DNA of 64,000 bases from Macrostomum hystrix. Its lineage: Eukaryota > Animalia > Platyhelminthes. The notes under the pieces are model-generated. The model searched no databases. It was not told where the DNA came from and worked only from the letters and a program-made list of their open reading frames with translations. Below, piece after piece: positions 11,701 to 42,602 of the stretch (its first letter is position 1; each line of letters starts with the position of its first letter). The stretch covers positions 124,001 through 188,000 of the forward strand of contig CATNEN010000030.1 in NCBI GenBank assembly GCA_950097015.1. The letters are read 5' to 3'. The translations under genes and the position numbers were made by a program.

Positions 11701-12184
11701 CCTGACGCAGCCTCTCGCGCAGCCGACAAACACCCGGCCGGCGGCGCCGTGAAGGCAGAAAGCCCGACTAGTTCGCAATTCGACAAAGCGTTCAACGTGT
11801 CGACGCTCAGAGAAATGACAGAGCTGGCCGCTGCTGCTGAGGGCAAGGAGACCGCCACCGTCTGGCAGCGGGTGCGCACCGACAAACGTGGCATTACGCA
11901 TGTCGCCCAAGATAGCGTTGCGGCTTTGAATTGGCACGGTGCCAACACGGCCGGATAGTTTAGGCGCGTCGAAATACCAGAAGCGAACGTGACGAACTCC
12001 GACGGTGACAAAATAGTGCGCATTGAAGGCGAACGCTACGGCAAATATGCGCGACGAGACTTTATTAGTTGCTAGGCGAGTCTCGGCGCGCCAGTCCCAC
12101 AGGCTGACGGTCATGTCTTGTTCAACGCCGACGCTGACTAGCAGGCGAGACGAGGGGCTGAAGTCCAGACAGCTGATAGCGTAT
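11701..12184 (-). CDS. WDR62: WDR62/MAPKBP1 exon 3 (WD40 repeats)
   Basis: Acceptor ctgtctag|A completes GHR|YAISCLDFSPSSRLLVSVGVEQDMTVSLWDW; donor AGG|gtaaga at 11700; NKVSSR and RHVRFWY match MAPKBP1. Confidence 0.92.
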
Positions 12185-16767: not shown

Positions 16768-17038
16768 ATAAATAATAATTATTGATTACACCAGCCCCGA
16801 CAGCACGGCCGCAGCAATTACGCGGCGCGTTTGAAGGCTGCGTACGGCTGTCCAGTCCATGGACTGGTGGACGCCACACCCAACCTCAATTACCCTAATC
16901 AATGCTGGAACCCATTTTTCTGCTGGCTGAACGGAAGCAAAGCAGGATTTAAGAGTCTTACACAATTGTTCCAGTGGTGACAAGAATCGAACCCACGACC
17001 TTCAAGTCTTAAGTCTGACGCTTTAACCACTAAACTAC
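16768..17038 (-). mobile_element. tRNA-derived SINE, family A
   Basis: Minus strand: gtagtttagtggttaaagcg (A box), ggttcgattct (B box), cagccagcagaaaaatgggttcc, palindrome CCAGTCCATGGACTGG 16852-16867, TA-rich tail. Confidence 0.7.
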
Positions 17039-17559
17039 AACAACGTCCTAATGGAAAAAAATGTTTTTCTATTGTTTATATCTAGAAATATAACACCCGA
17101 CCATATCCCGGCTATTGTGCGTGCACTTTAATCCAACAAATTTTAATTACTATTCCTATAAAAATTAGCAAACATACAAATAAAAAAACAACTCGAGAAA
17201 AGTCTTGGACTAGTGGACAAAGCGACATTACAACTCATGTTGTTTTAAACTTATAAAATAAAAAACAAAGAAAAAAAAAAAAATATGCGTCAACCGCAAA
17301 AAGGCCGATATAAAAAGCCTTGCTTAGTTAATAAAGCACACAAATAAAAACAAAATAAAATTTGATTAGGAGCACACAGGAATCACAGAACGCGCACAAC
17401 AGTTTTAAAAAACGCTCCAGAAATAGACAAAAAAGTTTGATAATATTTTAGCGCAGAAAGTTAATGGAAATGTTATGTATCTTCTCACGATAGATTGTTA
17501 ACACACATAATATTTTACTTACAGACAGATACATAGGTACATACAAATTAGACTTGTCG

Positions 17560-19405: not shown

Positions 19406-19981
19406 TCATCGCAGAAGAATCTTAAACTTCTCTAACTCCTCCATTAGCTGTCGATTCTGCGCTGTAAGCAGGCGAACTCGCGACTCCAAGCACTTTATAT
19501 AATCCTTCTTTTTCTGGCGACACATTCTGGCTGCTTCGCGATTCTTCATAAGCCGAGTCTCGCGCTTCCGATTCAGATAGTCCAACTGGCCACCGCCGCC
19601 TCCGCCAGCGCCACCAGCGGAAGTTGAGGCAAAAGCGGCCGAAGATGATGACGAAGATGACGGACCGCTACCGCTCGTAACAGGCGCGGAGGCGGCGGTG
19701 GCCGCTGCAGCCGCCGCAGCAGCTGCGGCAGCCGTGGCCATCGAAAACGGAAATGAAAAACTTCCAGCTGCCGAACTTACGGGCGCAAAAGCTGCTGCAG
19801 CTGCGGAAACGCCTCCGCTGATACTTCCATTATTGTTACCAACGCCACCATACGCACCAATTGGAGCAGCTAGAAGCATGGGCATAGGTATCATGCCATT
19901 GCTACTGCCGCCAATACCGCTAGAGGCATCATCCGACCCGGGCGTCTCTGGGCCCGCGGTGTTGGCCTTGTTACCCGACGG
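19406..19981 (-). CDS. CREB: CREB/CREM/ATF1-family bZIP transcription factor, terminal exon
   Basis: RKRETRLMKNREAARMCRQKKKDYIKCLESRV..L..QN..LMEEL is the CREB basic region/zipper. Acceptor acacttcag (AG 19983-19982), phase 0. No KID (RRPSY) in this exon; upstream exons not found. Confidence 0.88.
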   Translation of the reverse strand, partial: PSGNKANTAGPETPGSDDASSGIGGSSNGMIPMPMLLAAPIGAYGGVGNNNGSISGGVSAAAAAFAPVSSAAGSFSFPFSMATAAAAAAAAAAATAASAPVTSGSGPSSSSSSSAAFASTSAGGAGGGGGGQLDYLNRKRETRLMKNREAARMCRQKKKDYIKCLESRVRLLTAQNRQLMEELEKFKILLR

Positions 19982-20115
19982 CTGAAGTGTCAATGTTTTA
20001 TTTTTAATAGAGTGATTCTGATACTAAGATATCAGAACCAGAATACTTACTGATTACTAAACTGCTTCGACTGATATAAAATGTGTAAAATCTGACGTTG
20101 ATTATTGGTACAAAT

Positions 20116-23700: not shown

Positions 23701-24843
23701 AGCAATGAAACAAACTAAGTCGTAAATAGAGCAAAAACTAAGTTGCACGGCTGGCTAAGATTTGGGAGGTTGCGCATGTATGTTCCTTTCTTATGGCATA
23801 CTTACTTGGTAACTTGGGGCATAAGTATTGTTCTGTTTGTTAAACCATTTCAAATTCAAATTTGTTCAAAAATTAAGAAATACATTTCTTTGGTTTTAGC
23901 ACAAATTTAAATTCTAAATAGTTTAATGAATTGAACCATACTTATGTGTTATGCCACTTACTTTAGCTTTTTAAATAGGCCTAATGATATAATAAGAAAA
24001 TTATTAATTACTTATCCCAACAAAATTAGCAAATTTAGACATAGATGCAATTGCAAGTTGCATCCTGGTTTTCATATTTGCATCCCCATTTTTTGGCAGA
24101 AAAAAATTAATTATGGCACTGTTGCACTGTCCATAGTAGCTGAAAACTTAATATAATAGGGTCATGTAAAGTAGTTCAAATAACTATAGACAATTATAAT
24201 AATGAGTTCCATTGTCTTTTATTTGAATTTTTAGTATATCTTTATTAGTTGCAAATTTTATCCTAGGCCTACTTACTTGTAAGCTTTGAGATGTGGCATG
24301 AAATATCATTAGGGGGCCTATGCAGAATTCTCTAGTGTTGTTTTACTTTTCAGTCCTCAAACCATTTTTATAACATACAAATAATACACTCATTTTTAAC
24401 ATTTAGGCTTCCAAAATGAACATTTTTAACGTGAACTTTAGCCTTTCAGTTATTTGCATGCACCTGGGATGATATGGGCTATATGGATCACGATCACATC
24501 TAGCATTCTAGCTATTAGCTAATAATAGCTATGGGTCTAACTTCTTTCTCTCTACATAGTCATACATTTCTTGCAGAGCTTGCTTGAAAGTATTAAATGG
24601 AAGTTAGGGAAATAAGGAAGCCAAATCAATGCGACAAGCCAATTGTATGGCCGATTCAAAAAATTGACAAAAATGAATGACAATGCCTGTTAGACACAGG
24701 AATAAAATTACTTTTTCGACTCCAGATTTTATAATCAACTAAGCAAGCAGATACAGATACACAACGCATATAACAACGACACTAAATAGTACATATTTTA
24801 GACCTTAAACAAATCTGCTGTTTTTACATTTTTCTTTAATTTG

Positions 24844-25097
24844 TGTGACGGTGTAACTTTGAGTCAGTTAATTGCTTATTATTTTATTTTAATAATTCAT
24901 ACATATTAAGTTGCGGTCAAGATTATTTATTTGCTATGCGTGGTTACTAATTATTGTTATACTGTATCAGTCTAAGAAGCCTTTTTAAAAAGCAACGTAT
25001 GTATATTTTTCTTGTAGCCAGCGTGTGTGCATCGAGAGCACTTTGACAATATACTCACAAACTTAATTACATAACATCCTTACATTTATTCGTCACA
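24844..25097 (+). repeat. 5' LTR
   Basis: By eye identical to the 3' LTR except one T/G substitution (tatactcaca vs tatacgcaca). Confidence 0.97.
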
Positions 25098-25103
25098 TAA
25101 ATT

Positions 25104-25117
25104 TGGAGGGTCCCACC
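25104..25117 (+). promoter_or_regulatory. Primer-binding site, tRNA-Gln-like
   Basis: TGGAGGGTCCCACC, 6 nt after the LTR, matches the complement of the metazoan tRNA-Gln(UUG) 3' end (...GGUGGGACCUCCA) with one extra G. Confidence 0.7.
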
Positions 25118-25771
25118 TCGAAGACAGAAGCAAAATTGCTACCGCTACACGTTCTGCTACACACTACACATCATCGGCGTCTAACCCTGACCAAAAAAAA
25201 ACAAGTGCCGACTTAAAGGGCATAAGCACCGTCATAGTTGCCTGTTTGTCTGGCTGCGACCGCCTAGTTTGGAGTACTAGCAGCTTGAAGTTAGAAGCCG
25301 CAGCAACCCAATTGGCTGATTACCCAATTGGCTGCCAACCAATCAGAGACGACCTTACTAGTGGCCGACCTCAAGCGCAACGTAATTGTACGTCCTCAGC
25401 CAGAGCGACAACACCCCACGAGCTCAACACGCCGCGGCACTGGCAGTACTGGCTTGGTGAGGCTGTCTCGTTTTTAGGCTTAGAAATAGTTTTTTGCATA
25501 GGGCCCGTCTGGCAGAGTTTAGCACATAAAATTTTGGTCGTTCACCAGTGTTTCCTAGAATTTGAATAGGGGCCTCTTTCTCTGCCAGGCAATTCTGTTT
25601 ATGCCTTCACCTTTAATCTTCCTATCTCCTCTTTTCCTATTCTCATTCCGCTTTTCTAAATGATCGGAGAGGGTGACGAGGCACTGCCGCCTGATGGTGC
25701 TGGAGCTCAGGTGATCTTACAGGCAGGAGATAACCAAACTCAGTCAGCTCCACCAGGGAGGGAACAGTGAT

Positions 25772-28700
25772 GTGAAGCCACCTGAATTAAACGTAGGCCA
25801 GTTAGAACTGCAAAAAGTGCTCCAGACTCTGACTATGATACTAGAAAAAACGTGTGACAGAGAAGCATCAACAGCAGCTGAGAAAATCTCTAATTCAAGC
25901 CCTAAACTGCGACCACCACCACCATTCCAACCAGAAATGAATTTCGAGCTTTGGGAAACACAGTTCCTAACGTATGTTGATGCACACCACGTGCCAACCC
26001 CACAACAACCAGCAGTCCTGCTGTCCATGCTGGCACCTGAGTGCCAAGAATTCATCTTCAACAACTCATTGCACCATGAATCCATTCAGACAGCTCTGAT
26101 GAGGCTTAAAGAGCGATTTACAGACTCAGGAACTGAACAAAAGAGCTTTTTAGAACTAGCTTCAGCGACTCAGACAAATCTAGAATCCACACAAGAGTTC
26201 TTTGACAGGTTGATAAGGCTGTCAAAAACAGCGAACAGGAAAAAATGTGATGCTGAACCTCTAGTCCGAGCAAGGTTCTGCTATGGGCTGCGAGACAAGG
26301 CCCTTGCAGAAAGGCTGATACTTCTCGGACAAGAGAACCCATCATGGACAGCTGAAGATCTTGCAAAGAAGGCTAGGGAAATAGCAGGCGTCAAGAAGCT
26401 CCTGTCCGGTGAAACTGTCCCTCTTGTCAGGACAGCAGCCCCTGACAGAACAGCAGAGCTGGAAGCCCGTATTCGTGAACTAGAGAAACTGGTTCAGCAA
26501 AATCAGGCTTCTTTGCCAGCCTTCCAGACAGAGTCCCAATTAAAAGGGCATGCAAATCTTAATTCTACCTGTGGCCAAGGACCGCAGATACACAAAATGG
26601 ATAGTTATAGGACCAAAAACAGTCACCAATCTCGCAAGATGCGCAGGTCCTGCAACCGATGTGGTGTTGGTGATCATCATACCGCGGACTGCCCACAGCC
26701 ATTGCCCTTCGGCGGCACAGGTGGTGGAAGACTAAACACCACCGTGTCTCAGAGTCAGGTGATGGAGACAGGTACCATCACGGCTTTGAAGACTGGATTT
26801 GGCTTCATCCAACCAAGCCAAATACCAGGCTCCATCTTCTTTCATCAATCCAGCTTAGACAATGAGCTACAGCAGTTAGCCAATCAGCGCCAACTGGTAG
26901 GTACACTCGTACAGTTCTGGCGTCAAACGGACCCAGCTCACAACCGAGATAAGGCGATAGGAGTCTGCCGCTATCCATTCCCTGTCCGTTGTGATCAAAC
27001 GCTGACTAACGAGGCTAGAGTCGAGTCCAGCATGTTCGTGCAGTTAGAAATAGGTAACGATAAGTACATCGCTTGCCTTGATTCAGGTTGCAATGCTAGT
27101 GTCGTTGGAACTAAAATCAAGGACCAGCTGATCGCAAATGATCCCATAAATCACAAATTTGTCCCTGCTAGACAATACCGAGCCGCGACAGCTTTCAATG
27201 GAACCTCGTCACAGATTTTGGGCACGCTTCACTGTGAGGTCAAACTTGGAAAGAAGAAGCAGACCCACGTTTTCCTGGTAACGGAAGGTCAGGTCTCAGA
27301 TTTGCTGTTAGGAATAGACTTTATGAGAAGTTTTAGCGTTAACTTGCTTGTGGCTGATGGTCAGGTAACTGTAGCTGGAGAGCCTGTACCAGTCATTGAA
27401 GGTGACAAAGGAGTTTTCCAGGCACGCAGAGTCACAGCCGCCTGCAACGTGCACCTACCCCCCAGGTCAGAGACCATGGTGCCAAGCCGGGTCTCAGGTG
27501 CTGATCCTGGCACTCAGGGTGTTCTAGGCACTAAACTCTTCTGCCGGGACTCAGAGCTGTTTGTAGCACACTCCGTTGACAGTGTAAGCACCACTAACCA
27601 TGTACTCGTGCGCCTATTAAACAGTAGTGACCAGCCATCATCGATCTCCATGGGGCAGGAAATCGCCTCTTTTAGGAGCCTTGAACATGGGGATTCAATT
27701 TCTGTCACGCCTGTATCTGAGAAAGATTTCTCCATCAGCAGCTCTGAAGATCTTGGAGCCAAGCTTGCAAAACTCCCTGACCCAGACCCAGGAATAGCAT
27801 CTTGGCTGACGACACAGTTTAAGCTCAATGAGACCACCCTATCGAAAAACCAGCTGACAGTAACACTTAAACTGCTGAACTATTTTAGTAGTCAGATATC
27901 GCTAAACGAAACAGACCTAGGAAAAACACATGTACACGAGATGACAATTGAGCTGCAGGAGTCGGCTTGCCGCCCCATCTGGCAGCCATCTAGGCGCACG
28001 ACTCCCTCGCAGAAAGAATTTTTAGACAAACATATAAGCCAGTTAGTAAACCAAGGAATCATTGAAGAGTGTGACTCTGAGTGGTCCTCTCCAATAGTCT
28101 TAGTTCGAAAAAAAGATGGTTCCCAACGACTGTGTATTGACTATCGACAGGTCAACAAAGTAATCAAGCCATGCACCTTTCCTTTACCACTAATAGAAGA
28201 ATCGTTTGATAGCCTAGCAGAGTCGAAAATATTTTCCAGTTTAGATCTCACCGCAGCTTATTGGCAAGTAGGTATTCGCGAATGCGATCGAGACATCACA
28301 GCATTCTCATGCCCCCAGGGCACCTTCCGATGGAAGGTCGTACCCTTTGGCATCAAGACAGCACCGGCAAACTTTGCCAAGCTTATGCACAAAGTGTTCA
28401 GGCCTTTACTCATGCGCGTTAGTCTTATTTATCTAGATGATATAATCATAAAGGCCAGGGACAATGACGAAATGATCGTCCACTTGGCGCTTGTCCTCTG
28501 GCAACTTAAAAAGGCAAACCTTAAAATTAAACCAGCTAAATGTGAACTTTTCAAGGATCGCGTTCGGTTCTTAGGCTTCGTTGTTTCAGCTCATGGAATC
28601 GAAGCCGACCCAGCGAAGATCGACGCGGTTAAGAATTGGTGCAAACCATCAGATAAAAAGCAATTATTAGCGTTCCTAGGATTCGCGAACTATTATAGAA

Positions 28701-31700
28701 AGTTCGTGCAACGTTTTTCCGTGATCGCATCGCCGCTGTATGCGCTAGCTAAAGGATCGTCGACATTCTGCTGGCTGGAGCAGCATGACAAAGCTTTCGA
28801 AGAGCTGAAAGCAAATTTGTGCGCGCCTCCAATCCTTGCGTACCCTAACCTCAGTCCGTCAGCTAGACTCTTCATCTTAGATTGCGACTCCTCGCTGGAA
28901 GGAGTTGGCGGCGTTTTGTCACAAGAAGGTCCAGGTGGTCAGGAGCACGTCGTTGCATATGCTTCGAAAAAATTCACTCAATCGCAGAGGAATTACTGCG
29001 CCACGATGCGTGAATTACTTGGACTTGTCATCATGCTGGAACATTTTCGAACATATCTGCTGGACCGTAAGTTTCTTGTGCGCTCAGACGCAGCCGCCCT
29101 ACAATGGCTACACACTAAGAAGCACTCCACAGGTATGCTAGCACAATGGCTAGCTACGATCGAAGTGTATGACTTCAGCGTGAGTCAAACACCCCTAGAG
29201 CGGCTGGCTGAATATGACTTCTCTGTTGAGCATCGTGCAGGAGTCAAGCATGTCAACGCAGATGTGCTTAGTCGTAATCCAAGATTTAGGGCTGACCATC
29301 ACGACTGTCCTACATGTAGCCAGATCGAAGCTTTCAATGAGAAGTTTAGAAGCTTAGAAGGAAAAGAAAACCAGAAGGATCAAGAGTTCGTTCAGGTACC
29401 AGTACAACTGAGAGCCACACGAACAGACACTTCCAGTCAAACAGAACCACCACCAGAACTCTGCAAGACACAACCTCAGTCAGGTAGCGACTCTGTAGTC
29501 ACAAAAACTGAATTGACGACCAGAGATAGACATGAAGCCGACGCAAAAATGGCGACAACAGAAACGCAAACGGAGCAACCAAATGTCATCAGTCGAACAT
29601 CAAACATTCCTGTACAACAGGACAGTACATGCACATTACCATCATCTGCAACCGTACTATCTGATCAACCCAATGAGGTGTCAGAAAATCAGTTTGCGCT
29701 TGCTCCCATACCTCAGATGTCAGGTGAGATCGGAGCCAATCAAAGCCAACACACGTCTCGGACAGATCAAGTAGAACAATTGGAAGAAGACTCAGACGAA
29801 GATGAGATGTCTCAGGAAGCTGAGAACATTTGGGCCAGAGATGCACAAGAGTCTAGCACGGACCTAGTCAGGCTCATCGAAGCTGTTGCAGGGAAATCTC
29901 CGAAGCTAAAGAAAGAGGAAGTTCAGGACTGTAGTCGTGAAATCCGAACGTTGTGGGCCATGTTTGACGAGCTTGAGGTTGTGGACGGTCTGTTGATTCG
30001 CGTCAAGCCCGCCAAGCAAGGTCAAATAGCCAAACGTCTCGTCATTATACCTGAAACTGCGGATATCGACGAGCTAGTGTCCTGCTATCACAGGGAAATC
30101 AACCACTGTGGAACTGGTAAAACAGTTCGAGCATTGAAGCAGAGGTTTCAAATCACAAACCTGGAAGTGTTTGTCAAAGGTGTAATAGCGGAGTGCGAGA
30201 TCTGTAGTCGGACGAAGAAAAGCAAACGCTTGAATAAAGAACCTCTGAAACCAATCCAATCAGGATACCCGAATCAAATCGTACATGCAGACCACGCAGG
30301 TCCATTCCCTGAACTAGACGGCAGTCGGTACCTGCTAATCTTAGTCGACAATTTTTCAGGATTTGTGGAGATCATACCTGTCTCTGATGTGTCTGCCGAA
30401 ACAACTGCTACAGCCATTCTAACTGAGTGGGTTGTCCGCTATGGTGCCATGGAGAGCTTGATTTCAGATAATGGAACAGCATTTGTAAACAAGACCATTG
30501 CCGAACTCGCCCGTCTACTAGAAGTAGACCTATCGCGAATCACCGCGCGCAGACCACAGGCAAACGGCAAAGCGGAGCGAACAGTGCAGACGATCAAAGC
30601 CCAGATCCGCGCTGTTTGCCTTGAAAAAAGAATAAACTGGCCGTTTGCAGCCCAGCTAGTAGGCCTCTCTATCAGAAGCACCACGGCCGAATCAACAGGA
30701 TGGACTCCAGCCAGACTCTTCTTTGGCCGCGAGCTCACCCTGCCACTGGATCTAAAGTTCAACCCTCCAAGACAAGACCGGTATAATCCAGACTCCTACG
30801 CCCACAGGCTTCACAAACTCTTGGTGGAGGTGTCTGCAATTGCTCGTCAGGTGCGAGGCAAGGCCCAGCAAAGACAAAGGCGGAATTATGACCGCAACAC
30901 CATCCATTCTAACTTCGAAATCGGCGAACTTGTCTGGGTTCTGAACCCTGACCATCGAGGATTGGACACGGCTGTGTGGCTAGGGCCGTACAAGGTGGTT
31001 CAAAAGATTTCCGAGCGAAACTACCGCCTCATACCCGAGTTCGCCCGGGTTAACCCACTTTGCCAAGCCCCGAATCCAAATCACAACATTTACAATGTAG
31101 ACCGCATTAAGCGCTGCATTCGTAAACAGACGTATCAGGATGTTGTGGACAGATTTGGACTGAGGGTTCCAGCCATGATCCCACCATCGCGGTTGGGCCT
31201 GTTAGATGATCAGTCAGTGGGTCGAGCTGACCCTAGTCCAGGAACGACCAGCGAGTCAGAAGAGCATCACCCATGCGAAAGACGCGCCAGTGAAAGTTCG
31301 GACTCCTCAGAGGACGAAGTCCGATGTCCATCTTACGCTGCGGTGTCGGTTGTGTCGGCACACACCGAGCCGCCTGAGCCACGACGCGCATCGTCGCCTG
31401 AACTACAACACATCTTGCCGACTGAACCACCGCGTGTGACGTCGCCTGACTCACGACGCACCTTGCCTCCGGATTCGCCGCCAGCAGCCTTGGAAACTTC
31501 TCTTGTAGCGATACGGCCGGATGAAGTACCTGAGGTCGGAGCGGAGGTGCAAATCCTAGCTGAACAGGGGTTTGAACCCCAGGTGATTCACTCCAACAGC
31601 ACCATTGCAGCAGTAGACGAAAGTATAAGCTCGAAAAGCTTAGGTGATAACAGTGACACCAGGCCTGGGGCGTCATTAGATGAAGACGCCGTGGAAAGTT

Positions 31701-31882
31701 CCGGCGCAGATCAACAAGCTGAGGACTTGGTGGCACCAAGTGAACCGGCAAGTGCTGGTTCCACACTTTCTCCGGTCATGACGACCCGTTCCGGTCGTCA
31801 GGTGCGCAAGCCTCAACGTTTTCTAAACAGAGTGGTGCGATTTTGTACTAGACGTTCGACAAACGCGCCTACGTGCACCTAG
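25772..31882 (+). CDS. Gag-Pol polyprotein in one ORF: Gag, CCHC knuckle, cold-shock domain, aspartic protease, dUTPase-like remnant, RT, RNase H, integrase with GPY motif
   Basis: Frame open from 25715; first ATG 25832. CNRCGVGDHHTADC (26651-26692), LDSG (DSG 27080-27088), LCIDYR, YLDD (28430-28441), FILDCDSS/RELLG/RSD (RNase H), H-X4-H..CEIC, D30290/D30467-X35-E30575, WLGPY, terminal TRSGRQVRKPQRF. Confidence 0.95.
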   Translation: MKPPELNVGQLELQKVLQTLTMILEKTCDREASTAAEKISNSSPKLRPPPPFQPEMNFELWETQFLTYVDAHHVPTPQQPAVLLSMLAPECQEFIFNNSLHHESIQTALMRLKERFTDSGTEQKSFLELASATQTNLESTQEFFDRLIRLSKTANRKKCDAEPLVRARFCYGLRDKALAERLILLGQENPSWTAEDLAKKAREIAGVKKLLSGETVPLVRTAAPDRTAELEARIRELEKLVQQNQASLPAFQTESQLKGHANLNSTCGQGPQIHKMDSYRTKNSHQSRKMRRSCNRCGVGDHHTADCPQPLPFGGTGGGRLNTTVSQSQVMETGTITALKTGFGFIQPSQIPGSIFFHQSSLDNELQQLANQRQLVGTLVQFWRQTDPAHNRDKAIGVCRYPFPVRCDQTLTNEARVESSMFVQLEIGNDKYIACLDSGCNASVVGTKIKDQLIANDPINHKFVPARQYRAATAFNGTSSQILGTLHCEVKLGKKKQTHVFLVTEGQVSDLLLGIDFMRSFSVNLLVADGQVTVAGEPVPVIEGDKGVFQARRVTAACNVHLPPRSETMVPSRVSGADPGTQGVLGTKLFCRDSELFVAHSVDSVSTTNHVLVRLLNSSDQPSSISMGQEIASFRSLEHGDSISVTPVSEKDFSISSSEDLGAKLAKLPDPDPGIASWLTTQFKLNETTLSKNQLTVTLKLLNYFSSQISLNETDLGKTHVHEMTIELQESACRPIWQPSRRTTPSQKEFLDKHISQLVNQGIIEECDSEWSSPIVLVRKKDGSQRLCIDYRQVNKVIKPCTFPLPLIEESFDSLAESKIFSSLDLTAAYWQVGIRECDRDITAFSCPQGTFRWKVVPFGIKTAPANFAKLMHKVFRPLLMRVSLIYLDDIIIKARDNDEMIVHLALVLWQLKKANLKIKPAKCELFKDRVRFLGFVVSAHGIEADPAKIDAVKNWCKPSDKKQLLAFLGFANYYRKFVQRFSVIASPLYALAKGSSTFCWLEQHDKAFEELKANLCAPPILAYPNLSPSARLFILDCDSSLEGVGGVLSQEGPGGQEHVVAYASKKFTQSQRNYCATMRELLGLVIMLEHFRTYLLDRKFLVRSDAAALQWLHTKKHSTGMLAQWLATIEVYDFSVSQTPLERLAEYDFSVEHRAGVKHVNADVLSRNPRFRADHHDCPTCSQIEAFNEKFRSLEGKENQKDQEFVQVPVQLRATRTDTSSQTEPPPELCKTQPQSGSDSVVTKTELTTRDRHEADAKMATTETQTEQPNVISRTSNIPVQQDSTCTLPSSATVLSDQPNEVSENQFALAPIPQMSGEIGANQSQHTSRTDQVEQLEEDSDEDEMSQEAENIWARDAQESSTDLVRLIEAVAGKSPKLKKEEVQDCSREIRTLWAMFDELEVVDGLLIRVKPAKQGQIAKRLVIIPETADIDELVSCYHREINHCGTGKTVRALKQRFQITNLEVFVKGVIAECEICSRTKKSKRLNKEPLKPIQSGYPNQIVHADHAGPFPELDGSRYLLILVDNFSGFVEIIPVSDVSAETTATAILTEWVVRYGAMESLISDNGTAFVNKTIAELARLLEVDLSRITARRPQANGKAERTVQTIKAQIRAVCLEKRINWPFAAQLVGLSIRSTTAESTGWTPARLFFGRELTLPLDLKFNPPRQDRYNPDSYAHRLHKLLVEVSAIARQVRGKAQQRQRRNYDRNTIHSNFEIGELVWVLNPDHRGLDTAVWLGPYKVVQKISERNYRLIPEFARVNPLCQAPNPNHNIYNVDRIKRCIRKQTYQDVVDRFGLRVPAMIPPSRLGLLDDQSVGRADPSPGTTSESEEHHPCERRASESSDSSEDEVRCPSYAAVSVVSAHTEPPEPRRASSPELQHILPTEPPRVTSPDSRRTLPPDSPPAALETSLVAIRPDEVPEVGAEVQILAEQGFEPQVIHSNSTIAAVDESISSKSLGDNSDTRPGASLDEDAVESSGADQQAEDLVAPSEPASAGSTLSPVMTTRSGRQVRKPQRFLNRVVRFCTRRSTNAPTCT

Positions 31883-32387
31883 GGAGTTAGCTCATACATG
31901 TAGCAAATATTTCGCCGCCTACATCTCAAGTTCTTACTGTATTAAACTAGGTAATAAGTTTATCTTGTTAATGAGAAAATATGAAAAAAAACGTCAAAAA
32001 AAATAGAAGAAAAGTTTTTCAGAAAATTAAAAGAAGTAATGATAATAAAAACAATTTGAAGGAACTAAAATTTGACATTATGTTATTTCTTTGTATCGGA
32101 TACCAGGTTGCTGTTAGTCCGTGGAGATTGCAGGCGCTGCGTTGATCGGGTTGCGTCGCTTGCCGCACTTACTGTTCAGTGAGATGCCTGCACTTCGGGC
32201 TGTAGGGTTGGCGGTGCAGCGAGCACTCTCTGTTCATTTCTCGGGTTCCTGGCATCATTTTCGTGAGTTTAGGTCGTCGGTTTTGTCTTCTCTCTCCTTT
32301 CCTTCTCTTCTCGGGCGGGTGGCTCAGTTAGTTAGTAAAGGGGCGGGCAGGCCAGTGCCGCCAGCTGCCAAGACGTCGGTGGCTGCT

Positions 32388-32594
32388 GCACAACAGGCGA
32401 TCAAGGCCACAACAGGCGTTCCAGGGCCACAACAGGCGATCAAGGCCACAACAGGCGTTCCAGGGCCACAACAGGCGATCAAGGCCACAACAGGCGTTCC
32501 AGGGCCACCACAGGCGATCAAGGCCACAACAGGCGTTCCAGGGCCACCACAGGCGATCAAGGCCACAACAGGCGTTCCAGGGTCACCACAGGCG
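32388..32594. repeat. 39-bp tandem repeat x5 inside the retrotransposon 3' region
   Basis: caggcgatcaaggccacaacaggcgttccagggccacaa; units start at 32394 + 39n; each is a dimer of related 19/20-bp subunits. Confidence 0.93.
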
Positions 32595-33006
32595 CGACCG
32601 TGACGTTGCCTCGAACTCCGTAAATGACTTGTAGAGCACCACATCGTACAACGATCTAGTCAGAAATTTTTTATATGATAACTTGGACTATAATCAATAC
32701 TAAAACAGTTCTAACAAATATCTCTAATACAATATTTTTTCATATCGTGTTTCCGCCATAAACTTCAGTGCATTTTAATTTCCTAAATCAGTCAAATATT
32801 TTCGTGCCAATTTTGTGACCAAGAATATTCGTTTTCGATTGTCGTTTCCAGCAATATTACTCGTAGTAGGTTGCTTGCGAAGAAAAATTTAGTTTGCTTC
32901 GTTTTTAAACACCCTTTCACGTTGTTCGACGCTTAGAGACATTTATACTAGCTATTTATCGTAATTTAATGCTTTCGATTTTTTTGCGCCCACCTACCGC
33001 CTTTTC

Positions 33007-33020
33007 GGGAGGGAGGCGGG
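33007..33020 (+). promoter_or_regulatory. Polypurine tract
   Basis: gggagggaggcggg directly abuts the 3' LTR TG at 33021. Confidence 0.9.
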
Positions 33021-33274
33021 TGTGACGGTGTAACTTTGAGTCAGTTAATTGCTTATTATTTTATTTTAATAATTCATACATATTAAGTTGCGGTCAAGAT
33101 TATTTATTTGCTATGCGTGGTTACTAATTATTGTTATACTGTATCAGTCTAAGAAGCCTTTTTAAAAAGCAACGTATGTATATTTTTCTTGTAGCCAGCG
33201 TGTGTGCATCGAGAGCACTTTGACAATATACGCACAAACTTAATTACATAACATCCTTACATTTATTCGTCACA
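33021..33274 (+). repeat. 3' LTR
   Basis: Copy of 24844-25097 followed by TSD TTTG. Confidence 0.97.
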
Positions 33275-36053
33275 TTTGGATTCTAAAGGTTATTGAAATT
33301 TCAAATGCTTGTTTTAAAAGCAGTCACGTATAACGAAGTAAACCATTTTTTTTATTTTTCCGAGATTAAATCGCTTTCAGCTAGCATATTTGGTTTAATG
33401 GGCTTTTAGAGATTTATAATGTTTTTTGATGCGCAAAGAAAAAAGTTTAAGATGACAAACAACGTTTTTATGTCAATGTCAGAGCATGCCATTTTCACTT
33501 TTTTCTTTTTTTATGAATCTTGACAATAACAGAAAATGACATCGTGAATTATATCAATGTCGAGCTTTTGTTTTTATCTTTTTAGTCAACCGAATTTGTT
33601 GCACCAGCAGCTAGGCATTCGAAGTTACCGTACGTAATTGTCTTAAGTTTTACGTCACAAAGTGCCATTTATGTCATGTTATTGCTCTAGGGCTCTCTCT
33701 TCAATATTCTCCACTGTAATGTTAAACTCATACTATTACCCTTTAGTTACCAAAAGTTACTATTTATTACTAGTAGTGCTGCCACCAAGCAGAACGAACT
33801 GCTATCAAAGGAATGTTCCGAAGATATTCCTTAATTATTTGCACTTTTATTCTCTAGGGTAGTGTTTCTCTCTCTCTCTCTTGTACGTGTATACGTGGCC
33901 TGAGAGGTCTTTTAGCACCGGTTATGCACTTAATCCGTCAGGCGTACCTGTGGATTAGAGGGTCACAGCAACAGGCCTTTTATAATTGAACCACCTATAA
34001 ATAAACTCCGAAATTCGGGTATTTATACTTTCGTTGTCCTCTAAGTATTCTAAACACTCCTCTTCGTGCAAATCATTCCCTTCTCTGAATATTCTGCTTC
34101 AGGTATAGTTTCATAATAATTAAATTTCAAAAGATTTCGGATGTTTGCTTGTTTGTAAGGAAGCTTGTCCCGAAGGCACACGATGAATTCCTCTCTCCAG
34201 AATTCCTGCTCATATAATGTTTTATTTGCAATTGTTTAACAAAATTTTATTACAATATATATATTTTGGTTCGCGCCTATTTTAACAGCCATTTGAGAAA
34301 ATATTTTTGACTGTTCGACAATTTAAACAAATCGGAAAATATTTTTTACTTGTTTCGCTTAAACAAATTATTTTTTCTCGCGTGATTTTTACTTGCACAA
34401 CTTTGTTTTAGAGGCCTATTACATTAGGTCGTGTCATGTTATTTTAGTTAATAGTTGTCCTTGCTTGTTTTATACCCCCACGGCCTATAGGGCTGGCTAC
34501 TGCATGGCAGCTTGGAAATAACCACAGATACTAGAATAACTAGTATCTAGTTATTCTAGTATCTGTGGAAATAACTAATCGAAATTGTCTATTTAGTTAT
34601 AAAACTAAACAAGATCACTCATTGCTTTCCTGAGAGACACTTGAACAGCACTCGAACTGCATTTCACTAATAAAGTTATCTGTGAATTTCAAGTCCAATA
34701 GTATGCAAAACAATTTGCGTAACTTTTGTATTGCGATTACAAGGAATTCAATATACTACGGCTAGCAATATGAGTTTTGATTCGAAGTGAATTTACAACT
34801 TTTTTGGCATGTCAGATATTATGTTGAATTCACTTTTGATTTCAACCTAATCTAATCAATTTGATTTGAAACGTCGTAGATTTAGGGAAGTCCACTCAGG
34901 CTCACTCAGACCTACCGTGGCTCCCGTCGGGAAGCTATTTGGACTTGGATCCGGAGCGAACTGCTGCTGCTAGGAGGCACAATCAGCACAATGAACTAGC
35001 TGCTAAAGTATTTTGTAACTGCTGATAAATCTGTCCGTTAACACCATCCTGCAGCTGGACAATGCCCTATATGGCTCTGGTGCGAGGCTGTGTGACCAGG
35101 CACATTGAGCATGCAAGCGCTGCCAGCTGGCCTGCCAATATTCGGACCGACCTTAAATCCAATAAGGTTTCAGCAGCGAGCCCTGTCAAACACGGGACCA
35201 CCTAGAGTTATGTTAAGAGCATAATAGGAAATTCTTGGTATTGGGCTAGTAAAAATGTATGATTCGTTTCATTGTTTTCTAGCTAATCGACAACTATATA
35301 TTGACCTTTAAGCGACCTAAATTTTTGCCTCCGGCTCCCTATTTTTAATTGAAAAGTTCAAGTGAATCATATGAATTGCGAATTGTTATTGTTTACCCAA
35401 TAGCTACGAGTCATAGTTTTATTAAACTGAGAAGCAAGCTTTTTAAGATAGGAAATTGTGTATTAATCAGCTTGTTTATCAACAAACTGTTATTTAAACT
35501 TTGCTCATTCAGATAGTTGAACGCCACAGACTGTTTCCTCAGTGTAAGAATAGACACGGGGCACTTCGTTTCTTGGAAAATGTATTAAAGACAGATTTTC
35601 GCGGAAAAAATGCACAAGCGAGATAGGAACTTTTAACTTTTTTTCACACTAAAATGTTCATTACTTTTTATTTGAAGCAGATAAAATGCTGTTATTTTAA
35701 TATATCCTGCAAAACATGTTGCTTCGACGAAATTTATAAAGCTTCATTCGCGAATAATTGATCTTCGTTGAACGTGTTTATCTTCATTTTTCATGAAGCA
35801 CAATAGCTAGTCAAAAGCTATATCTACGAAAATGGTAAAAATCGAAAATAAAATGAAGATTTCCTGTCCTTCCCCTAGTTGCCCTTGGTAATTAATGCCA
35901 CAATTTAATTTTAAATACGAAAATTACGTACTGACTTTGAATCACGCATTTTGATTAACAAAATATTATATAACGAAGCTGAAAAGCAGAGGCTCTGAAT
36001 AAACAAGTTGCCAATTAGTTAATTAGTCCGAATTTTAATTGTGTCTGACAAAT

Positions 36054-37790: not shown

Positions 37791-40700
37791 ATGAAGCATG
37801 CAGCCGCCTGCACCCGCCTGGCATCCCTGCTGCTGCTGCTGCTCGCGCTCGCGCAGACGTCGGCCGCGTCACCTGGCCGCTACAACTTCACGGTGCACGA
37901 GAACCGGCCAGCGGGATTTCAGGTCGGCCAGGTGAAGCTGAGCTCGGGCTTTGCTTATCAGCTCAGCCCGGCCTCGTCCTTGTTCAGCTTCGACAGCGCA
38001 ACCGGCATCATCACAACAAAGCTGTCTATCGATCGCGAGACTCTTGGCTCCGACACTGTCGACCTATTAATCATCGGCTCGTCGACCTCTTCCGTTGTGT
38101 CGCTTAGTGTTCGCATTCACATTCTTGATGAGAATGACAATAGTCCGCGCTTCCCTGAGCCATTAATAACCTGGGAGATCTCCGAAAATGCCATCGTTGG
38201 CAGTGCGAGAATCTTGCCCGTGGCAACAGACCCTGATGTCGGAGCTAATTCAGTGACGCTTAATTACAAAATCACGTCAGGCAACGCAGAAGGCAAGTTT
38301 CACCTGCGAGTCGAAAATTCGCTGGGCTTTTTGCAACTGAAGCTGCTGACTGTCGGACGGCTTGACCGAGAGAAAACCAGCTCCTACAGCCTCAACATAT
38401 CGGCAGAAGACGGCGGCCACCCGATACTTTATGGCTACCTGGCTGTCCAGGTAACAGTCGAGGACTACAATGATGAGCGTCCTAGGTTTGAGCAGCAGAT
38501 TTACCAGGCGTTGATCAACGAGACTGTCGCGATTGGCCAAGAGATCGCCCGGGTTAAAGCAACTGACGCGGATCAGACAGGTACAGTGAACTCACTGGTC
38601 ACTTATAGATTCAAGGAAACGCCACACAAGAGCGAATTCGAAGTGGATGCCAGAACTGGGGCTGTTCGAGTCGCCAAGCCGCTAAGCTGCTTTCGCACCA
38701 CTGATGGCTGCTCACTGAGCATCGAGGCAACGGATAACGGCGTGCCACAGCTTCATTCCGAGAATTCCTGCACCGTCCAGATCACTGTACTGCGTTCCAA
38801 TGATCATAGCCCGGAAATCCGCGTAATCCTAAGCACAAAGAAGGACGACTATGCCGTCATTGATGAGACTTCAAAGCCAGATGACCCTATCGGAGTCGTC
38901 CAAGTGACTGATGCTGACTCAGGCAGCAACGGCCAGACCAGCTTGGCTTTGCTACAGTCTTCTGGTTACTTTGCACTGCGCCTTTTAGCAGCAAATTACT
39001 ATCGGATTGTCACTGCCAGGACATTCACGGCGGACTCACCAAAAGACTTTCAGCTGCTCCTTAGGGCGGAGGACAAAGGTCAACCGCCGAGGATTTCAAC
39101 TCTGACTGTTACAGTGCGAGTAAACAAGGCAAACCAGTTCGCGCCCAGCTTTAATGAGAGTCTAAAGGCGGTGCGTCTGTCTCAGCTGGCGCCCGTTGGA
39201 TCATTTGTTGCCAGCATGACCGCGCATGACAACGACTCGCAGGGTATTAACTCCGAGGTGCGCTACCAAATTGTTGGTGGCAACGATGGCGACTATTTTC
39301 GAATCGTGCATGACTCGGGTTTGGTGTTGACGAAAAAGCTTCTAAAACTGATGAAGCAGTCAGTCTTCCGCTTGAACATCAGCGCCAGTGACAGCGGGCC
39401 GAAGCGGCTCGTTTCGTACGCAATGCTCCAGGTGCAAGTGGAGCGCGGCAATCATGCACCTGTTTGCAAAGACGGCCGACTTGAGTTCCAGGTACAACAG
39501 GGCAATGCGTTCCACTCTTCACTCAATGAAATTTGCCATGACTCCGATGCTGGTCCTAATGGCGCACTCACCTTTAGTATCCAGCGTCAGACAGCGTTGA
39601 GCAGTGTCAACAAGTGCCAGATAAGTGCAGGGCGATTCAGTTGCCCCAGAGTAAAGGAAGAGGCGCAATACGTCATTGTTGTCAGCGATCAGGCTCAGAC
39701 ACCGTTGCAAACTCGCGTACACCTGAAAATCCGTGTCGTAAAAAACGAGTCAATTGAGTTGCAGTTTTATCCACTTCGCTATCATGTGACAACGCCGGCA
39801 GGTGTGTCCAACTTTGGCAAGACACTGACACGGCTGAGGGCTTCGGCCAGTGGTACTCTTCACTACACCATGCAGAGTCTGCGCCCAGACTTCATGATCG
39901 ATTCCAATGATGGAGCGGTGAGAATGGCCAACTACACCGCTGTAGATGTGGCTACGTTGCTCTTTCTGGTCAATGATGAGCACGGGAACATAGCCAAGAA
40001 TCCGGCCATTGTGCGCGTTTATCCTGAGCCAGTGACTTCTACCGGTAGGCCGGTGTTTCTACAGGCGCAGTACCAATTTAAGCTACCCGAGGACAACGGT
40101 CCCGCAACCAGTTCCAAGGAAACTCGCAACATTGGTTTCATTTCGGCTTCCGGTGTTTACGGATACGAGATTGTCGCTGGCGATCCGGAGGGTATTTTTA
40201 GTGTGTCCAGCTCAGGTGCTTTAAGTGTGGTCAAACATTTGGATCGGGAGCAGACCTCCAACTTTAACCTAACAATTGTTGGACTCGCAAGCGCAGATGT
40301 ATGTACGTGTCATGTGAGCATCAAAGTCATTGACCAAAACGACAACGCACCTGGATTCGAGTGGACAGCGTATGAGTTTAACATTAGCGACTCAACTCCG
40401 ATTGGTCAAGCCATAGGCACTACCAAGGCATTGGATTCTGACGAGGGAATGAACTCGAAGCTAAGCTACGAACTTCTTGGAAGACGAGCTGCTTACTTTG
40501 AGCTCGACAAGGATAGCGGTCTACTCAAATTGTCTTATCCTGTGTCAAAGTGGCTGGATGCGGAACTGAAGCAGGGAATCAGTCTTACAGTGTCAGTGAG
40601 CGACGCCGGGAAGCCATCAAGGAACAGCTCGGTGGAAGTTCGCGTCACCGTCGACCCCAGCTATAATGACTATCCAATACTGGACGAGATAAAGAACGAA

Positions 40701-42602
40701 TTCTTCGTAAGAGAAGACGCTGCAGTCAATAGCATCATTGGACAGCTGAATGCAAGTGGAAAGTACTCGATTGTTTACTCACTGAGTCCATTTTTCTCAT
40801 CCGAGCAACCAGAATCTGATATTTCAGTACTGCCAACAGGCGAGTTGTACATTAGCAATGCACTAGATCGAGAAACGCGTGACACCTACGAAATAGAAGT
40901 TTACGCAACGTTTTTTGAGCCGTCATTGAACTCGCAACCGGAGTGGATGACTTCAAGCACCACTGTGACAGTGTACGTACAAGATGTGAACGACTGTAGC
41001 CCGATTTTCTCACGGAGCAACTATGTGTTTGAGCTGCCAGAGAATTCAACACACAATCACCTGGTTGGACGTGTCTTTGCTGCCGACGCTGATGAAGGTG
41101 CAAACGGGCACATTCTCTACTACCTAGCAGATTTGCCTCATCAGGGGTTGTTCTACATAGACCCTGTCCTGGGTGAGATCCGATCTCTCCGTCGGTTTGA
41201 CTTTGAGAATCCTGGAGACAGGGAGTTCGAATTCGCAGTGGTTGCTAAAGACCGTGGAAGTAGCGAAGACGCAGTCAGGAGCGGTCACGCTCGTGTTCGA
41301 GTGCTCATTACGGACGTGAACGATCACAGGCCAAGATTCAAATCGTCCGTTTTCCGCTTTGAGATCGCAGAAAATACCACAGAAGGCAGCATTGTAGCTC
41401 AACTGTCTGCGAATGATGCAGACAGCGGGCTTAACGGAGCGATGGTGTTCAGCTTCCTCGGCGGGAACGAGCTAGGTAACTTTGCCATTGGTGAGAACAC
41501 TGGAGAGCTAAGAATAAGTAAACTGCTCGATAGAGAACTGAAAGAAAGATTTGAGCTTGTTGTGAGCGTGTCAGACAAGGGCGAACCAAAACTGTCAACA
41601 ACAGCCGTGGTCTTCATTCAGGTGCTTGACTGCAATGACCAGAAGCCAGTGTTCTACAACACACAAGTTGGTCAAATAGCGGTGTCGGAAGACATTAGAC
41701 CGGGAACAGGCATTCATAGGTTCTATGCAACTGACAGAGATTCTGGTAACTATTCGAAGTTTTACTTTTCCATCGCATTCGGTAACATTGACGAGGTTTT
41801 CGGCATGGATCTAGTGACTGGCAAGCTGTACATCGCGAAACCGTTAGATTACGAAATTCGGTCTCTGTACCACTTGGTAATTCGAGCTACTGATTTTGGC
41901 GGCCAGTTTACCCAAATTAATTTCACAGTTCGCGTTGAGAACGTAGATGACAATGCGCCCGAATTCATTGGATCTCCGCTGGTTATTCAAGTTGAAGAAA
42001 ATTTGAGCGGACGCACAATAGGCAAGGTGGTTGCCAAGGACGCCGACGGAGATGAGATCTCGTACCACCTGGTGTTTCAAGAGCCGTACGGAACCGATTT
42101 CAGAGTCGACAGCCTGACTGGCGCAATAGTCGTAGAAAAGGCACTGGACCGTGAGCGAGTGGCCGTCTACAAGCTGCACATTGAGGCCAGGGACAGGCCG
42201 ACCAAGGCTGCAGGGAGGCGGCTCACATCAGCTGTCACAATCGCCACTGTCATTGTTGACGATGTTGACGATAACAGGCCGGTTCTGCACACGCAGGCCG
42301 GATTGCTCCTGCCGCTAACCCTGACGCCCGGGGCCAAGGTGGCGCGCCTCATCGCTTCGGATGCTGATCAAGGTGAGAACGCGAAAATTTTCTTTGCAAT
42401 CTCCGGCCCGGACGCCGCCTACTTCGCCGTAGACAAGCTCACGGGCGAGCTGACGCTGCTAACGCAGCCGGTAGAAGCAAAGACATACTTCGATCTGCTC
42501 GTGAAGCTGAATAAAGAAGATAGCGGCCAGCCGGTGAAGCTGATTGTGCCCTCCAGGGAGAATAATGGTCCAATCTTCTCGCAATCGTCCTACACAGGCG
42601 AG
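37791..42602 (+). CDS. FAT4: FAT4/fat-like giant cadherin, coding exon 1 (signal peptide plus about 15 cadherin repeats, 1604 aa)
   Basis: GFAYQL, IDRETLGSDTVDLLII, DENDNSPRFPEP, ATDPDVGAN, GNAEGKFHL, GRLDRE align with FAT4 EC1-2 as I recall them (GFTYRL, IDRESLPSDVINLVV, DLNDNAPVFPDP, ATDSDIGSN, GNEAGRFRL); donor GAG|gtgagt at 42603. Confidence 0.88.

What the first reader, a model, noticed from the sequence alone, without database searches (positions are those of the whole stretch)
26762..26968. Cold-shock domain embedded in a Gypsy Gag-Pol next to the CCHC zinc knuckle
Seen: between the single CCHC knuckle (26651-26692) and the protease (DSG at 27080) the polyprotein reads METGTITALKTGFGFIQPSQIPGSIFFHQSSLDNEL...LVGTLVQFWRQTDPAHNRDKAIGV, in frame, in an otherwise intact element. 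Known: this fits a cold-shock domain, with TG-hydrophobic strand, RNP1 (K-GFGFI), RNP2 (IFFH-S), a G-x-x-V-x-F strand and a final K-A-x-x-V strand. FFH and the missing KWFN resemble Unr/CSDE1-type CSDs more than CspA or YB-1. CSD plus CCHC is the LIN28 and plant CSP combination, here in reverse order, and CSDs are single-stranded RNA/DNA chaperones. I know of no standard Gypsy architecture with a CSD. Inference: the element captured a host RNA-chaperone module that extends its nucleocapsid, perhaps aiding genome packaging, tRNA-Gln annealing, strand transfer or translational control of its own RNA.
Basis: partly seen in the sequence, partly recalled or inferred. Interest (0 to 1): 0.88.

Follow-up and report, generated by a model that had tools for sequence, protein, structure and literature searches.

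The report
Cold-shock domain inside flatworm Gypsy retrotransposons
A young Gypsy-type jumping gene in a Macrostomum-like flatworm genome carries a real cold-shock RNA-binding domain between its zinc knuckle and its protease; related active elements in Macrostomum lignano keep the same domain under selection, and I found no earlier description of this design.

Summary
Window 26762-26968 encodes a 69-residue cold-shock domain (CSD) in frame in a 2036-codon Gag-Pol ORF. It lies between the single CCHC knuckle (26651-26692) and the protease (DSG at 27080).

- **Domain identity:** Pfam PF00313 scores 33.0 bits (cut-off 27). AlphaFold gives a five-stranded barrel (pLDDT 92.6). Its best structural matches are CSD1 of Drosophila and human Unr/CSDE1.
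- **The element:** it spans 24844-33274, with 254-nt LTRs differing at one base and a 4-bp target duplication, so the insertion is recent.
- **Host:** a relative of Macrostomum lignano, not M. lignano itself.
- **Other copies:** three M. lignano families (66-85% identical in PR-RT-RNase H, at least 30 annotated copies) have the same CCHC-CSD-PR layout. So does a fifth, far more distant M. lignano lineage.
- **Selection:** synonymous sites are saturated, yet the CSD is 43-68% identical while its N-terminal linker is 11-25% (C-terminal 35-57%).
- **Absence elsewhere:** 117 other related Gypsy polyproteins and three neighbouring non-Macrostomum loci have no CSD.
- **Not settled:** no close cellular donor was found. 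One versus two acquisitions is unresolved. RNA binding and its role in replication are inferred.
- **Literature:** searches found no prior description.

Verdict: a new variant of a known kind.

The parts
24840..24843 (+). Target-site duplication TTTG (left copy); right copy at 33275-33278
24844..25097 (+). 5' LTR, 254 nt, TG...CA, one mismatch to the 3' LTR
25104..25123 (+). Primer-binding-site-like sequence (TGGAGGGTCCCACC...), 6 nt after the LTR. The tRNA-Gln assignment was judged by eye only and not tested.
   Evidence: assignment is inference
25660..25770 (+). 36-codon ATG ORF homologous to residues 7-37 of the M. lignano polyprotein P0001, in a different frame from the main ORF. The frame changes between about 25755 and 25772.
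25772..31882 (+). Gag-Pol ORF, 2036 codons without a stop; first in-frame ATG at 25835
26651..26692 (+). Single CCHC zinc knuckle (nucleocapsid), preceded by a basic stretch (net +6 over residues 270-293)
26693..26761 (+). Gly-rich linker, poorly conserved (11-25% identity to the M. lignano families)
26762..26968 (+). Cold-shock domain (residues 331-399). Predicted b1-b2-b3-helix-b4-b5. RNP1 K-T-G-F-G-F-I and RNP2 I-F-F-H.
27032..27361 (+). Aspartic protease (residues ~421-530), DSG at 27080-27088
28103..28582 (+). Reverse transcriptase (PF00078, residues 778-937; YLDD at 28430)
28772..29170 (+). RNase H (PF17917/PF17919, residues 1001-1133)
30065..30607 (+). Integrase zinc-binding and core domains (residues 1432-1612)
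32350..32633 (+). 39-nt (19+20) tandem array in the 3' untranslated part of the element
33007..33020 (+). Polypurine tract GGGAGGGAGGCGGG directly before the 3' LTR
33021..33274 (+). 3' LTR

Best explanation
A lineage of Ty3/Gypsy LTR retrotransposons in Macrostomum flatworms acquired a eukaryotic, Unr/CSDE1-like cold-shock domain. It sits between the nucleocapsid CCHC knuckle and the protease. The domain has been kept under purifying selection while the lineage split into at least four to five families that were recently active in at least two host species. The most likely role is a single-stranded RNA/DNA-binding module in Gag-Pol that works beside the lone zinc knuckle. It would add affinity or chaperone activity for the element's own RNA, in packaging, primer annealing or strand transfer, or in control of its translation. 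Shown here: domain identity, position, conservation, distribution, and recent activity of the carriers. Inferred: capture from a cellular gene, nucleic-acid binding, and the replication step served.
For: - **Identity:** PF00313 is above its cut-off for the window piece, and all four related pieces match at E <= 0.01, best 4.2e-9. The L004 piece scores 30 bits.
- **Fold:** the AlphaFold model has pLDDT 92.6 and pTM 0.80 with CSD topology. Foldseek top hits are 4qqb_X and 1wfq (TM 0.76-0.81), and all 50 best hits are CSDs.
- **Binding residues:** F/Y and F of RNP1 and F and H of RNP2 are invariant in five sequences.
- **Same position:** CCHC-CSD-PR is found in P0001, P0011, P0012/P0155 and L004.
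- **Selection:** pS is 0.76-0.82 (saturated) against pN 0.18-0.46 in the CSD. CSD identity is 68/49/43%, against 25/11/17% in the upstream linker.
- **Gain within Gypsy:** none of 117 other relatives has a CSD. In about 30 fused relatives the CCHC-to-PR start-to-start distance is mostly ~50-90 aa, against 127-130 here. L005, L006 and L007 have none in any frame. The four close carriers form one clade with 100% support.
- **Activity:** LTR pairs are 99.6-100% identical, and the long polyprotein/pol reading frames are open in the window and in L001-L004.
- **Family sizes:** clusters of 10, 7 and 13 annotated copies.
- **Parallel in trans:** host Unr/CSDE1 binds HIV-1 NC and Gag and promotes IRES-driven translation and early infection (PMC9413769).
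Against: - No binding or functional data exist.
- The CSD is near neutral in charge, net 0 to +4.
- The last aromatic position of canonical RNP2 is not conserved.
- No close cellular donor was found. The best single cellular domain scores about 40 bits, and the best matches whose source is named are protist or algal multi-CSD proteins rather than flatworm proteins.
- In L004 the CSD lies after the gag stop in the -1 pol frame. It would then be present only in Gag-Pol, which fits an N-terminal Pol or transframe role at least as well as an NC extension.
- dN/dS could not be computed because synonymous sites are saturated.
- The high-confidence model used an alignment made of CSD homologues, which favours that fold. 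The two-sequence model reached only pLDDT 69.6, though it gave the same top hits.
Confidence: 0.6

Rival explanations
1. The CSD acts on translation or host factors rather than as a capsid-associated chaperone. As a cis-encoded mimic of one Unr/CSDE1 module it would bind the element's own leader or poly(A)-proximal RNA to drive or time Gag-Pol translation. Alternatively it would compete with host CSD proteins.
For: The nearest solved relatives by sequence and by structure are Unr/CSDE1 CSDs, CSD1 above all. Unr acts as an IRES trans-acting factor for HIV-1 and interacts with NC and Gag (PMC9413769). The element has a leader of about 560-740 nt between the LTR and the first candidate start codons.
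Against: Only one CSD is present, whereas Unr works as a multi-CSD array. The domain sits inside a polyprotein next to NC. No element-specific RNA motif was examined.
Confidence: 0.2
2. The CSD belongs functionally to the N-terminus of Pol, a transframe-like region. There it would modulate protease activation or Gag-Pol incorporation, with or without nucleic-acid binding.
For: In L004 the CSD is encoded downstream of the gag stop in the -1 pol frame, followed by a coiled coil and then PR. In all carriers it is the last folded unit before PR.
Against: The nucleic-acid-contacting aromatic residues are invariant, which a purely structural spacer would not need. The window clade has a single ORF, so there the domain is made in every polyprotein.
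Confidence: 0.13
3. The match is a chance resemblance, an assembly chimera, or a decaying passenger with no function.
For: The Pfam score inside the full polyprotein (26.0) is just below the cut-off, and two of the M. lignano pieces score 22-23 bits in 600-aa context.
Against: The excised pieces are above the cut-off or all hit PF00313. Fold prediction and fold search agree. The domain is at the same place in five lineages from two genomes with intact ORFs. It is far better conserved than its linkers.
Confidence: 0.02

Closest known systems
Unr/CSDE1 cold-shock domains (human and Drosophila; PDB 1wfq, 4qqb, 2yty, 2ytx, 7zhh)
   Same: They are the best sequence matches in the PDB, both for the single sequence and for the profile. 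They are also the best structural matches (TM 0.76-0.81, 27-32% identity). They share the pattern E-x-G-x-I ... (F/Y)-G-F-I ... (I/L)-F-F-H-x-S, and they lack the bacterial KWFN motif.
   Different: Unr/CSDE1 proteins are cellular and carry five canonical plus four non-canonical CSDs. Here there is one CSD inside a retrotransposon polyprotein. No PF23456 (CSDE1) region is present. Identity is only about 30%, so no donor is identified.
Ty3/Gypsy (Metaviridae) LTR retrotransposons of animals, including the Macrostomum lignano families surveyed in PMC12801592
   Same: LTRs with TG..CA ends, a 4-bp target duplication, PBS and PPT, a Gag with one CCHC knuckle, and the order PR-RT-RNase H-IN.
   Different: There is an extra folded CSD between the knuckle and PR. 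It is absent from the 117 other relatives examined and is not mentioned in the M. lignano LTR-retrotransposon survey or the DARTS paper.
LIN28 and plant CSD/zinc-knuckle proteins (for example AtGRP2/CSP)
   Same: They combine a CSD with CCHC knuckle(s) joined by a flexible, sometimes Gly-rich linker. This is a two-module single-strand RNA binder or chaperone.
   Different: The order is reversed (knuckle, then CSD). There is one knuckle, of retroelement origin, since CSD-less neighbours have it at the same place. LIN28 CSDs are not among the sequence hits at E <= 1 and appear only at rank 37 and below in the fold search.
Other domain gains by LTR retrotransposons (chromodomain in chromoviruses, dUTPase, additional RNase H, env-like ORFs); from general knowledge
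   Same: A cellular or foreign module is fused into Gag-Pol and then fixed in a lineage.
   Different: I know of none that is a CSD/OB-fold RNA-binding module placed next to the nucleocapsid.

Membership tests
Cold-shock domain (Pfam PF00313, S1-like OB fold) | Match to the family HMM above the curated cut-off | tested here: met
   33.0 bits against a cut-off of 27, E 5.4e-8, on the excised domain. All four related pieces match PF00313 at E <= 0.01, best 4.2e-9. L004 scores 30 bits. Within the full polyprotein the score is 26.0, just below the cut-off.
Cold-shock domain (Pfam PF00313, S1-like OB fold) | Five-stranded antiparallel beta-barrel | tested here: met
   This is a prediction only. The AlphaFold model has pLDDT 92.6 with b1-b2-b3-helix-b4-b5. 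All top 50 Foldseek PDB hits are CSDs, the best at TM 0.81 and rmsd 1.9.
Cold-shock domain (Pfam PF00313, S1-like OB fold) | RNP1 (K/R-G-F/Y-G-F-I) and RNP2 (V/I-F-x-H-F) nucleic-acid-binding motifs | tested here: met
   RNP1 (F/Y)-G-F and RNP2 F-x-H are invariant in five sequences. The final aromatic of RNP2 is variable, as it is in Unr CSD1.
Cold-shock domain (Pfam PF00313, S1-like OB fold) | Binding of single-stranded RNA/DNA | not testable with these tools
   Needs a binding assay with the recombinant domain.
Unr/CSDE1 protein family | Array of multiple CSDs with interspersed non-canonical CSDs (PF23456) | tested here: not met
   There is a single CSD and no PF23456 hit in the polyprotein. 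The resemblance holds at the level of the individual domain only.
Ty3/Gypsy (Metaviridae) LTR retrotransposon | Paired LTRs, target duplication, PBS/PPT, and Gag-PR-RT-RNase H-IN order | tested here: met
   Placement in a named clade (Mag, Osvaldo and so on) was not tested because no reference set was at hand.
LIN28 / plant CSP type CSD-zinc-knuckle proteins | N-terminal CSD followed by CCHC knuckles in a stand-alone cellular protein | tested here: not met
   The order is reversed, there is one knuckle, and the unit is embedded in a polyprotein. No LIN28 chain appears among the profile hits at E <= 1.

The most novel reading that the evidence does not exclude
A flatworm-specific radiation of currently active Gypsy elements has built into its own polyprotein a copy of the kind of host factor (an Unr/CSDE1-type CSD) that retroviruses recruit in trans through nucleocapsid. 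The domain was gained once or even twice independently at the same NC-PR junction, and it is required for packaging or translation of the element's RNA. If so, this is a natural cis experiment on why retroelements need cold-shock proteins.
Probability: 0.25. Interest if true: 0.8.

Novelty: new variant of a known kind. Interest (0 to 1): 0.68.

Why it matters
Nucleocapsid chaperone activity is central to retroelement replication and is normally supplied by zinc knuckles and basic tails. A lineage that added a canonical cold-shock domain at this spot, and kept it through deep divergence while staying active, shows another way to supply RNA-binding capacity.

It links to reports that retroviral NC and Gag use host Unr/CSDE1. 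It also occurs in Macrostomum lignano, a flatworm with working transgenesis and documented LTR-retrotransposon transcription, so the role of the domain can be tested directly.

There is a practical point too. In at least one lineage the domain lies upstream of the annotated gene start, so protein-based surveys under-count it.

Tried and rejected
- **Word-indexed search** with the CCHC-CSD region found only one cluster, P0001. The wider picture came from searching with the Pol region and from the exhaustive profile search.
- **Donor search:** the best 150 of 260 profile hits were, apart from two M. lignano polyproteins, cellular multi-CSD proteins. Their high scores come from summing several domains. 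The best single domain is about 40 bits. The named ones are fish CSDE1, dinoflagellate and green-algal proteins, so no donor can be named. Hits ranked 151-260 were not shown and remain unexamined.
- **dN/dS:** not computable because synonymous sites are saturated in every pair. I report pN, pS and identity by region instead.
- **One or two acquisitions:** the Pol tree pairs L004's element with the window clade (SH-aLRT 82, with a long-branch warning). The CSD tree places L004's CSD elsewhere. The AU test does not reject a single clade (p 0.32). This stays unresolved.
- **Metagenome scans:** two scans, with the CSD profile and with CSD+PR, confirmed nothing.
- **P0102:** its contig could not be read because the file was too large.
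- **Supplements:** the supplementary tables of PMC12801592 are not held.
- **Host species:** it could be bounded only as 'not M. lignano, but related'.
- **Handling:** the contig is not human.
Full report
**1. The observation**

Window 26762-26968 reads METGTITALKTGFGFIQPSQIPGSIFFHQSS...DKAIGVC. It is in frame within a 2036-codon open reading frame, 25772-31882 on the + strand. The single CCHC knuckle is at 26651-26692 and the protease DSG at 27080.

Pfam finds the usual Gypsy order in this ORF: aspartic protease, RT (residues 778-937), RNase H (1001-1133) and integrase (1432-1612). It finds PF00313 (cold-shock domain) between the knuckle and the protease. On the excised 77-78 residues the CSD scores 33.0 bits (E 5.4e-8, curated cut-off 27). 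Inside the whole polyprotein it scores 26.0, just under the cut-off.

**2. The element**

The ORF lies in an LTR retrotransposon spanning 24844-33274.
- The two 254-nt LTRs begin TG and end CA, and they differ at one position.
- They are flanked by a TTTG target duplication (24840-24843 and 33275-33278).
- A primer-binding-site-like sequence starts 6 nt after the 5' LTR.
- A polypurine tract (33007-33020) abuts the 3' LTR.

The insertion is therefore recent.

One qualification applies to 'otherwise intact'. A 36-codon ORF starting at ATG 25660 is homologous to residues 7-37 of the closest M. lignano polyprotein, but it is in a different frame from the long ORF. The frame changes between about 25755 and 25772, and the first in-frame ATG of the long ORF is at 25835. 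This could be a real defect, an assembly error, or of no consequence because the N-terminal tail is not conserved among families. I cannot tell which, and I give no correction.

**3. The host**

The window carries metazoan genes: a WDR62/MABP1-like gene, a bZIP gene, a FAT4-like cadherin exon and one tRNA-Leu. The C-terminal WDR62-like exon is 56% identical over 91% of its length to a Macrostomum lignano protein, and nothing else comes close. The host is therefore a relative of M. lignano and not that species. The contig is not human.

**4. Is it a real cold-shock domain?**

Sequence evidence:
- phmmer of the piece against PDB sequences puts human UNR CSD1 (1wfq) first, followed by other Unr/CSDE1 CSDs, then AtGRP2 and bacterial Csps.
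- A profile of the four related element CSDs puts Unr/CSDE1 domains in 9 of the top 10 places (best E 6.9e-6). CspA sits near E 0.02 and YB-1 near 0.1. No LIN28 chain appears at E <= 1.

Structure evidence:
- With only two sequences, AlphaFold gave a modest model (pLDDT 69.6) that already had CSD topology and CSD top hits.
- With a 64-row alignment of the element CSDs and the best cellular domains, the model reached pLDDT 92.6 and pTM 0.80. Its strands are at 4-14, 17-22, 29-32, 53-61 and 66-74, with a short helix between b3 and b4.
- Foldseek against the PDB returns Drosophila Unr CSD1 (4qqb_X, TM 0.76/0.81) and human UNR CSD1 (1wfq, TMq 0.81, rmsd 1.9 A, 32% identity) first. All 50 best hits are CSDs.

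That alignment consists of CSD homologues and so favours the CSD fold, but the sequence evidence stands without it.

**5. Is it confined to this copy?**

No. The closest database protein is an M. lignano polyprotein, P0001 (PAA63164.1). It is 70% identical overall and 85% in PR-RT-RNase H, and it has the CSD at the same place.

A search with the Pol region found two further M. lignano families: P0011 (70% identical) and P0012 (66%, with P0155 from the same family). All have CCHC-CSD-PR. Their 90%-identity clusters hold 10, 7 and 13 annotated proteins.

The genomic loci L001, L002 and L003 have uninterrupted reading frames of 1796-2076 codons and LTR pairs 99.8-100% identical. These are recently active families.

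**6. Selection**

In codon alignments of the window against L001, L003 and L002, synonymous differences are saturated everywhere (pS 0.75-1.0). A dN/dS value therefore cannot be given.

| Region | Amino-acid identity (vs L001 / L003 / L002) | pN |
|---|---|---|
| CSD | 68 / 49 / 43% | 0.18 / 0.37 / 0.46 |
| Gag | 76 / 38 / 37% | not quoted here |
| Protease | 83 / 55 / 48% | not quoted here |
| Linker before the CSD | 25 / 11 / 17% | 0.54-0.71 |
| Linker after the CSD | 57 / 40 / 35% | not quoted here |

The CSD is conserved much like Gag and protease, and clearly better than the linker before it. Invariant positions include the aromatic residues of RNP1 ((F/Y)-G-F-I) and RNP2 (F-x-H). This is the pattern of a domain under purifying selection that keeps its nucleic-acid-binding face.

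**7. How far does it extend?**

*Exhaustive profile search.* A search of 1.84 billion representative proteins gave 260 hits at E <= 0.001. Among the best 150, only P0011 and P0155 have Gag/Pol homology. All the others are cellular multi-CSD proteins.

*Other Gypsy polyproteins.* Among the 117 other Gypsy polyproteins most similar in Pol, none has a CSD-like segment. Where knuckle and protease are in one protein, the knuckle-to-protease distance is mostly about 50-90 residues, against 127-130 in the carriers.

*Pol tree.* In an RT-RNase H tree the four carriers form a clade with 100% SH-aLRT support on a long stem. Its nearest neighbour is another M. lignano element, P0044, which is only about 35% identical in Pol.

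*The P0044 element.* The annotated P0044 protein starts just before the protease, so I read its locus, L004.
- The gag ORF ends about 20 residues after its CCHC knuckle.
- The pol frame (-1) is open from 3323.
- That frame encodes a CSD at about 3455-3673, upstream of the annotated start. PF00313 scores 30 bits, E 4.8e-7.
- A coiled-coil stretch and then the protease follow.

A fifth, very distant lineage therefore has the same layout, and its gene model hides the domain.

*Non-Macrostomum neighbours.* Three neighbours have no CSD in any frame: L005 (a TARA metagenome contig), L006 (Pinctada) and L007 (a JGI metagenome contig). Two metagenome scans found nothing. The viral structure library holds only stand-alone CSD proteins of giant viruses and phages among the top matches, and no reverse-transcribing element.

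**8. One gain or two, and from where?**

- **Pol tree:** it joins L004's element to the carrier clade with 82% support, but long branches meet there.
- **CSD tree:** on 83 columns, the four close CSDs group together (98/94) and the L004 CSD is placed elsewhere.
- **AU test:** it does not reject a single clade of all five (p 0.32).

One gain is the simpler reading, given the identical position, but two gains are not excluded.

No donor can be named. The best single cellular domain reaches only about 40 bits. The best matches with a named source are fish CSDE1, dinoflagellate and green-algal multi-CSD proteins. The statement that the domain came from a cellular gene rests on two things: CSDs are cellular domains, and the carriers nest among CSD-less Gypsy elements.

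**9. Mechanism**

What is shown is a canonical-looking CSD with intact RNP1/RNP2 aromatics. It sits 23 residues after a single zinc knuckle and its basic lead-in, and about 20 residues before the protease. It has been conserved in elements that transposed recently.

CSDs bind single-stranded RNA and DNA and act as chaperones (review PMC7825780). Nucleocapsid knuckles do the same for retroelements. The most likely role is therefore added single-strand binding or chaperone capacity for the element's RNA.

Two alternatives remain open. The first is a role in translation of the element's RNA, by analogy with host Unr/CSDE1. Unr binds HIV-1 NC and Gag and stimulates the viral IRES (PMC9413769). The second is a role at the N-terminus of Pol, as the L004 arrangement suggests. 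None of these could be tested here.

**10. Prior knowledge**

- Full-text searches combining cold-shock domain with retrotransposon, gag, Gypsy, LTR, polyprotein and nucleocapsid found no description of such an element.
- The survey of M. lignano LTR retrotransposons (PMC12801592) and the DARTS paper do not mention it.
- The 2021 review of CSDs contains no mention of retroelements.
- Automated Pfam annotation already lists PF00313 on one of the M. lignano proteins. The fact is therefore latent in databases but, as far as I could find, undescribed.
- The library does not cover most subscription journals, so an earlier report cannot be excluded.

**11. Verdict**

The finding is real and robust at the level of domain identity, position, conservation and distribution. 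Its function is inferred. It is a new variant of a known kind: a Ty3/Gypsy lineage with an added RNA-binding module.

Noticed in passing
window 25660-25835: A 36-codon ATG ORF homologous to the N-terminus of the M. lignano polyprotein is out of frame with the 2036-codon ORF. The first in-frame ATG of the long ORF is at 25835.
   Followed up: partly
window 32350-32633 (ORF 32121-32603); L001 9488-10310: There is a tandem array of alternating 19- and 20-nt units between the pol stop and the polypurine tract. The related M. lignano element has a repeat array at the same place. Function unknown.
   Followed up: no
L004 3323-3700 (M. lignano NIVC01000738.1): The CSD of this distant Gypsy element lies in the -1 pol frame, upstream of the annotated start of the gene model. 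The deposited protein lacks it, so protein-database surveys will under-count CSD-bearing elements.
   Followed up: yes
window 6026-12114 (-), 19406-19993 (-), 37791-42689 (+), 16971-17045 (-): Host genes: WDR62/MABP1-like exons, a bZIP gene, a 1632-codon FAT4-like cadherin exon and tRNA-Leu(TAA). The WDR62-like exon is only 56% identical to M. lignano, so the host is a different macrostomid.
   Followed up: partly
window 3003-3964: Three overlapping ORFs of 262-305 codons lie on both strands, with coiled-coil (tropomyosin-like) matches. This suggests a repetitive coding region.
   Followed up: no
window 60001-64000: Strong negative GC skew (-0.25 to -0.39) with a GLTT-repeat ORF at 60272-60991.
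   Followed up: no
window aa 1200-1370 and 1760-2036 of the polyprotein (about 29369-29881 and 31049-31879): There is a long acidic spacer between RNase H and integrase, and a Ser/Pro/Glu-rich C-terminal tail. Both are poorly conserved between families (28-45% identity).
   Followed up: no
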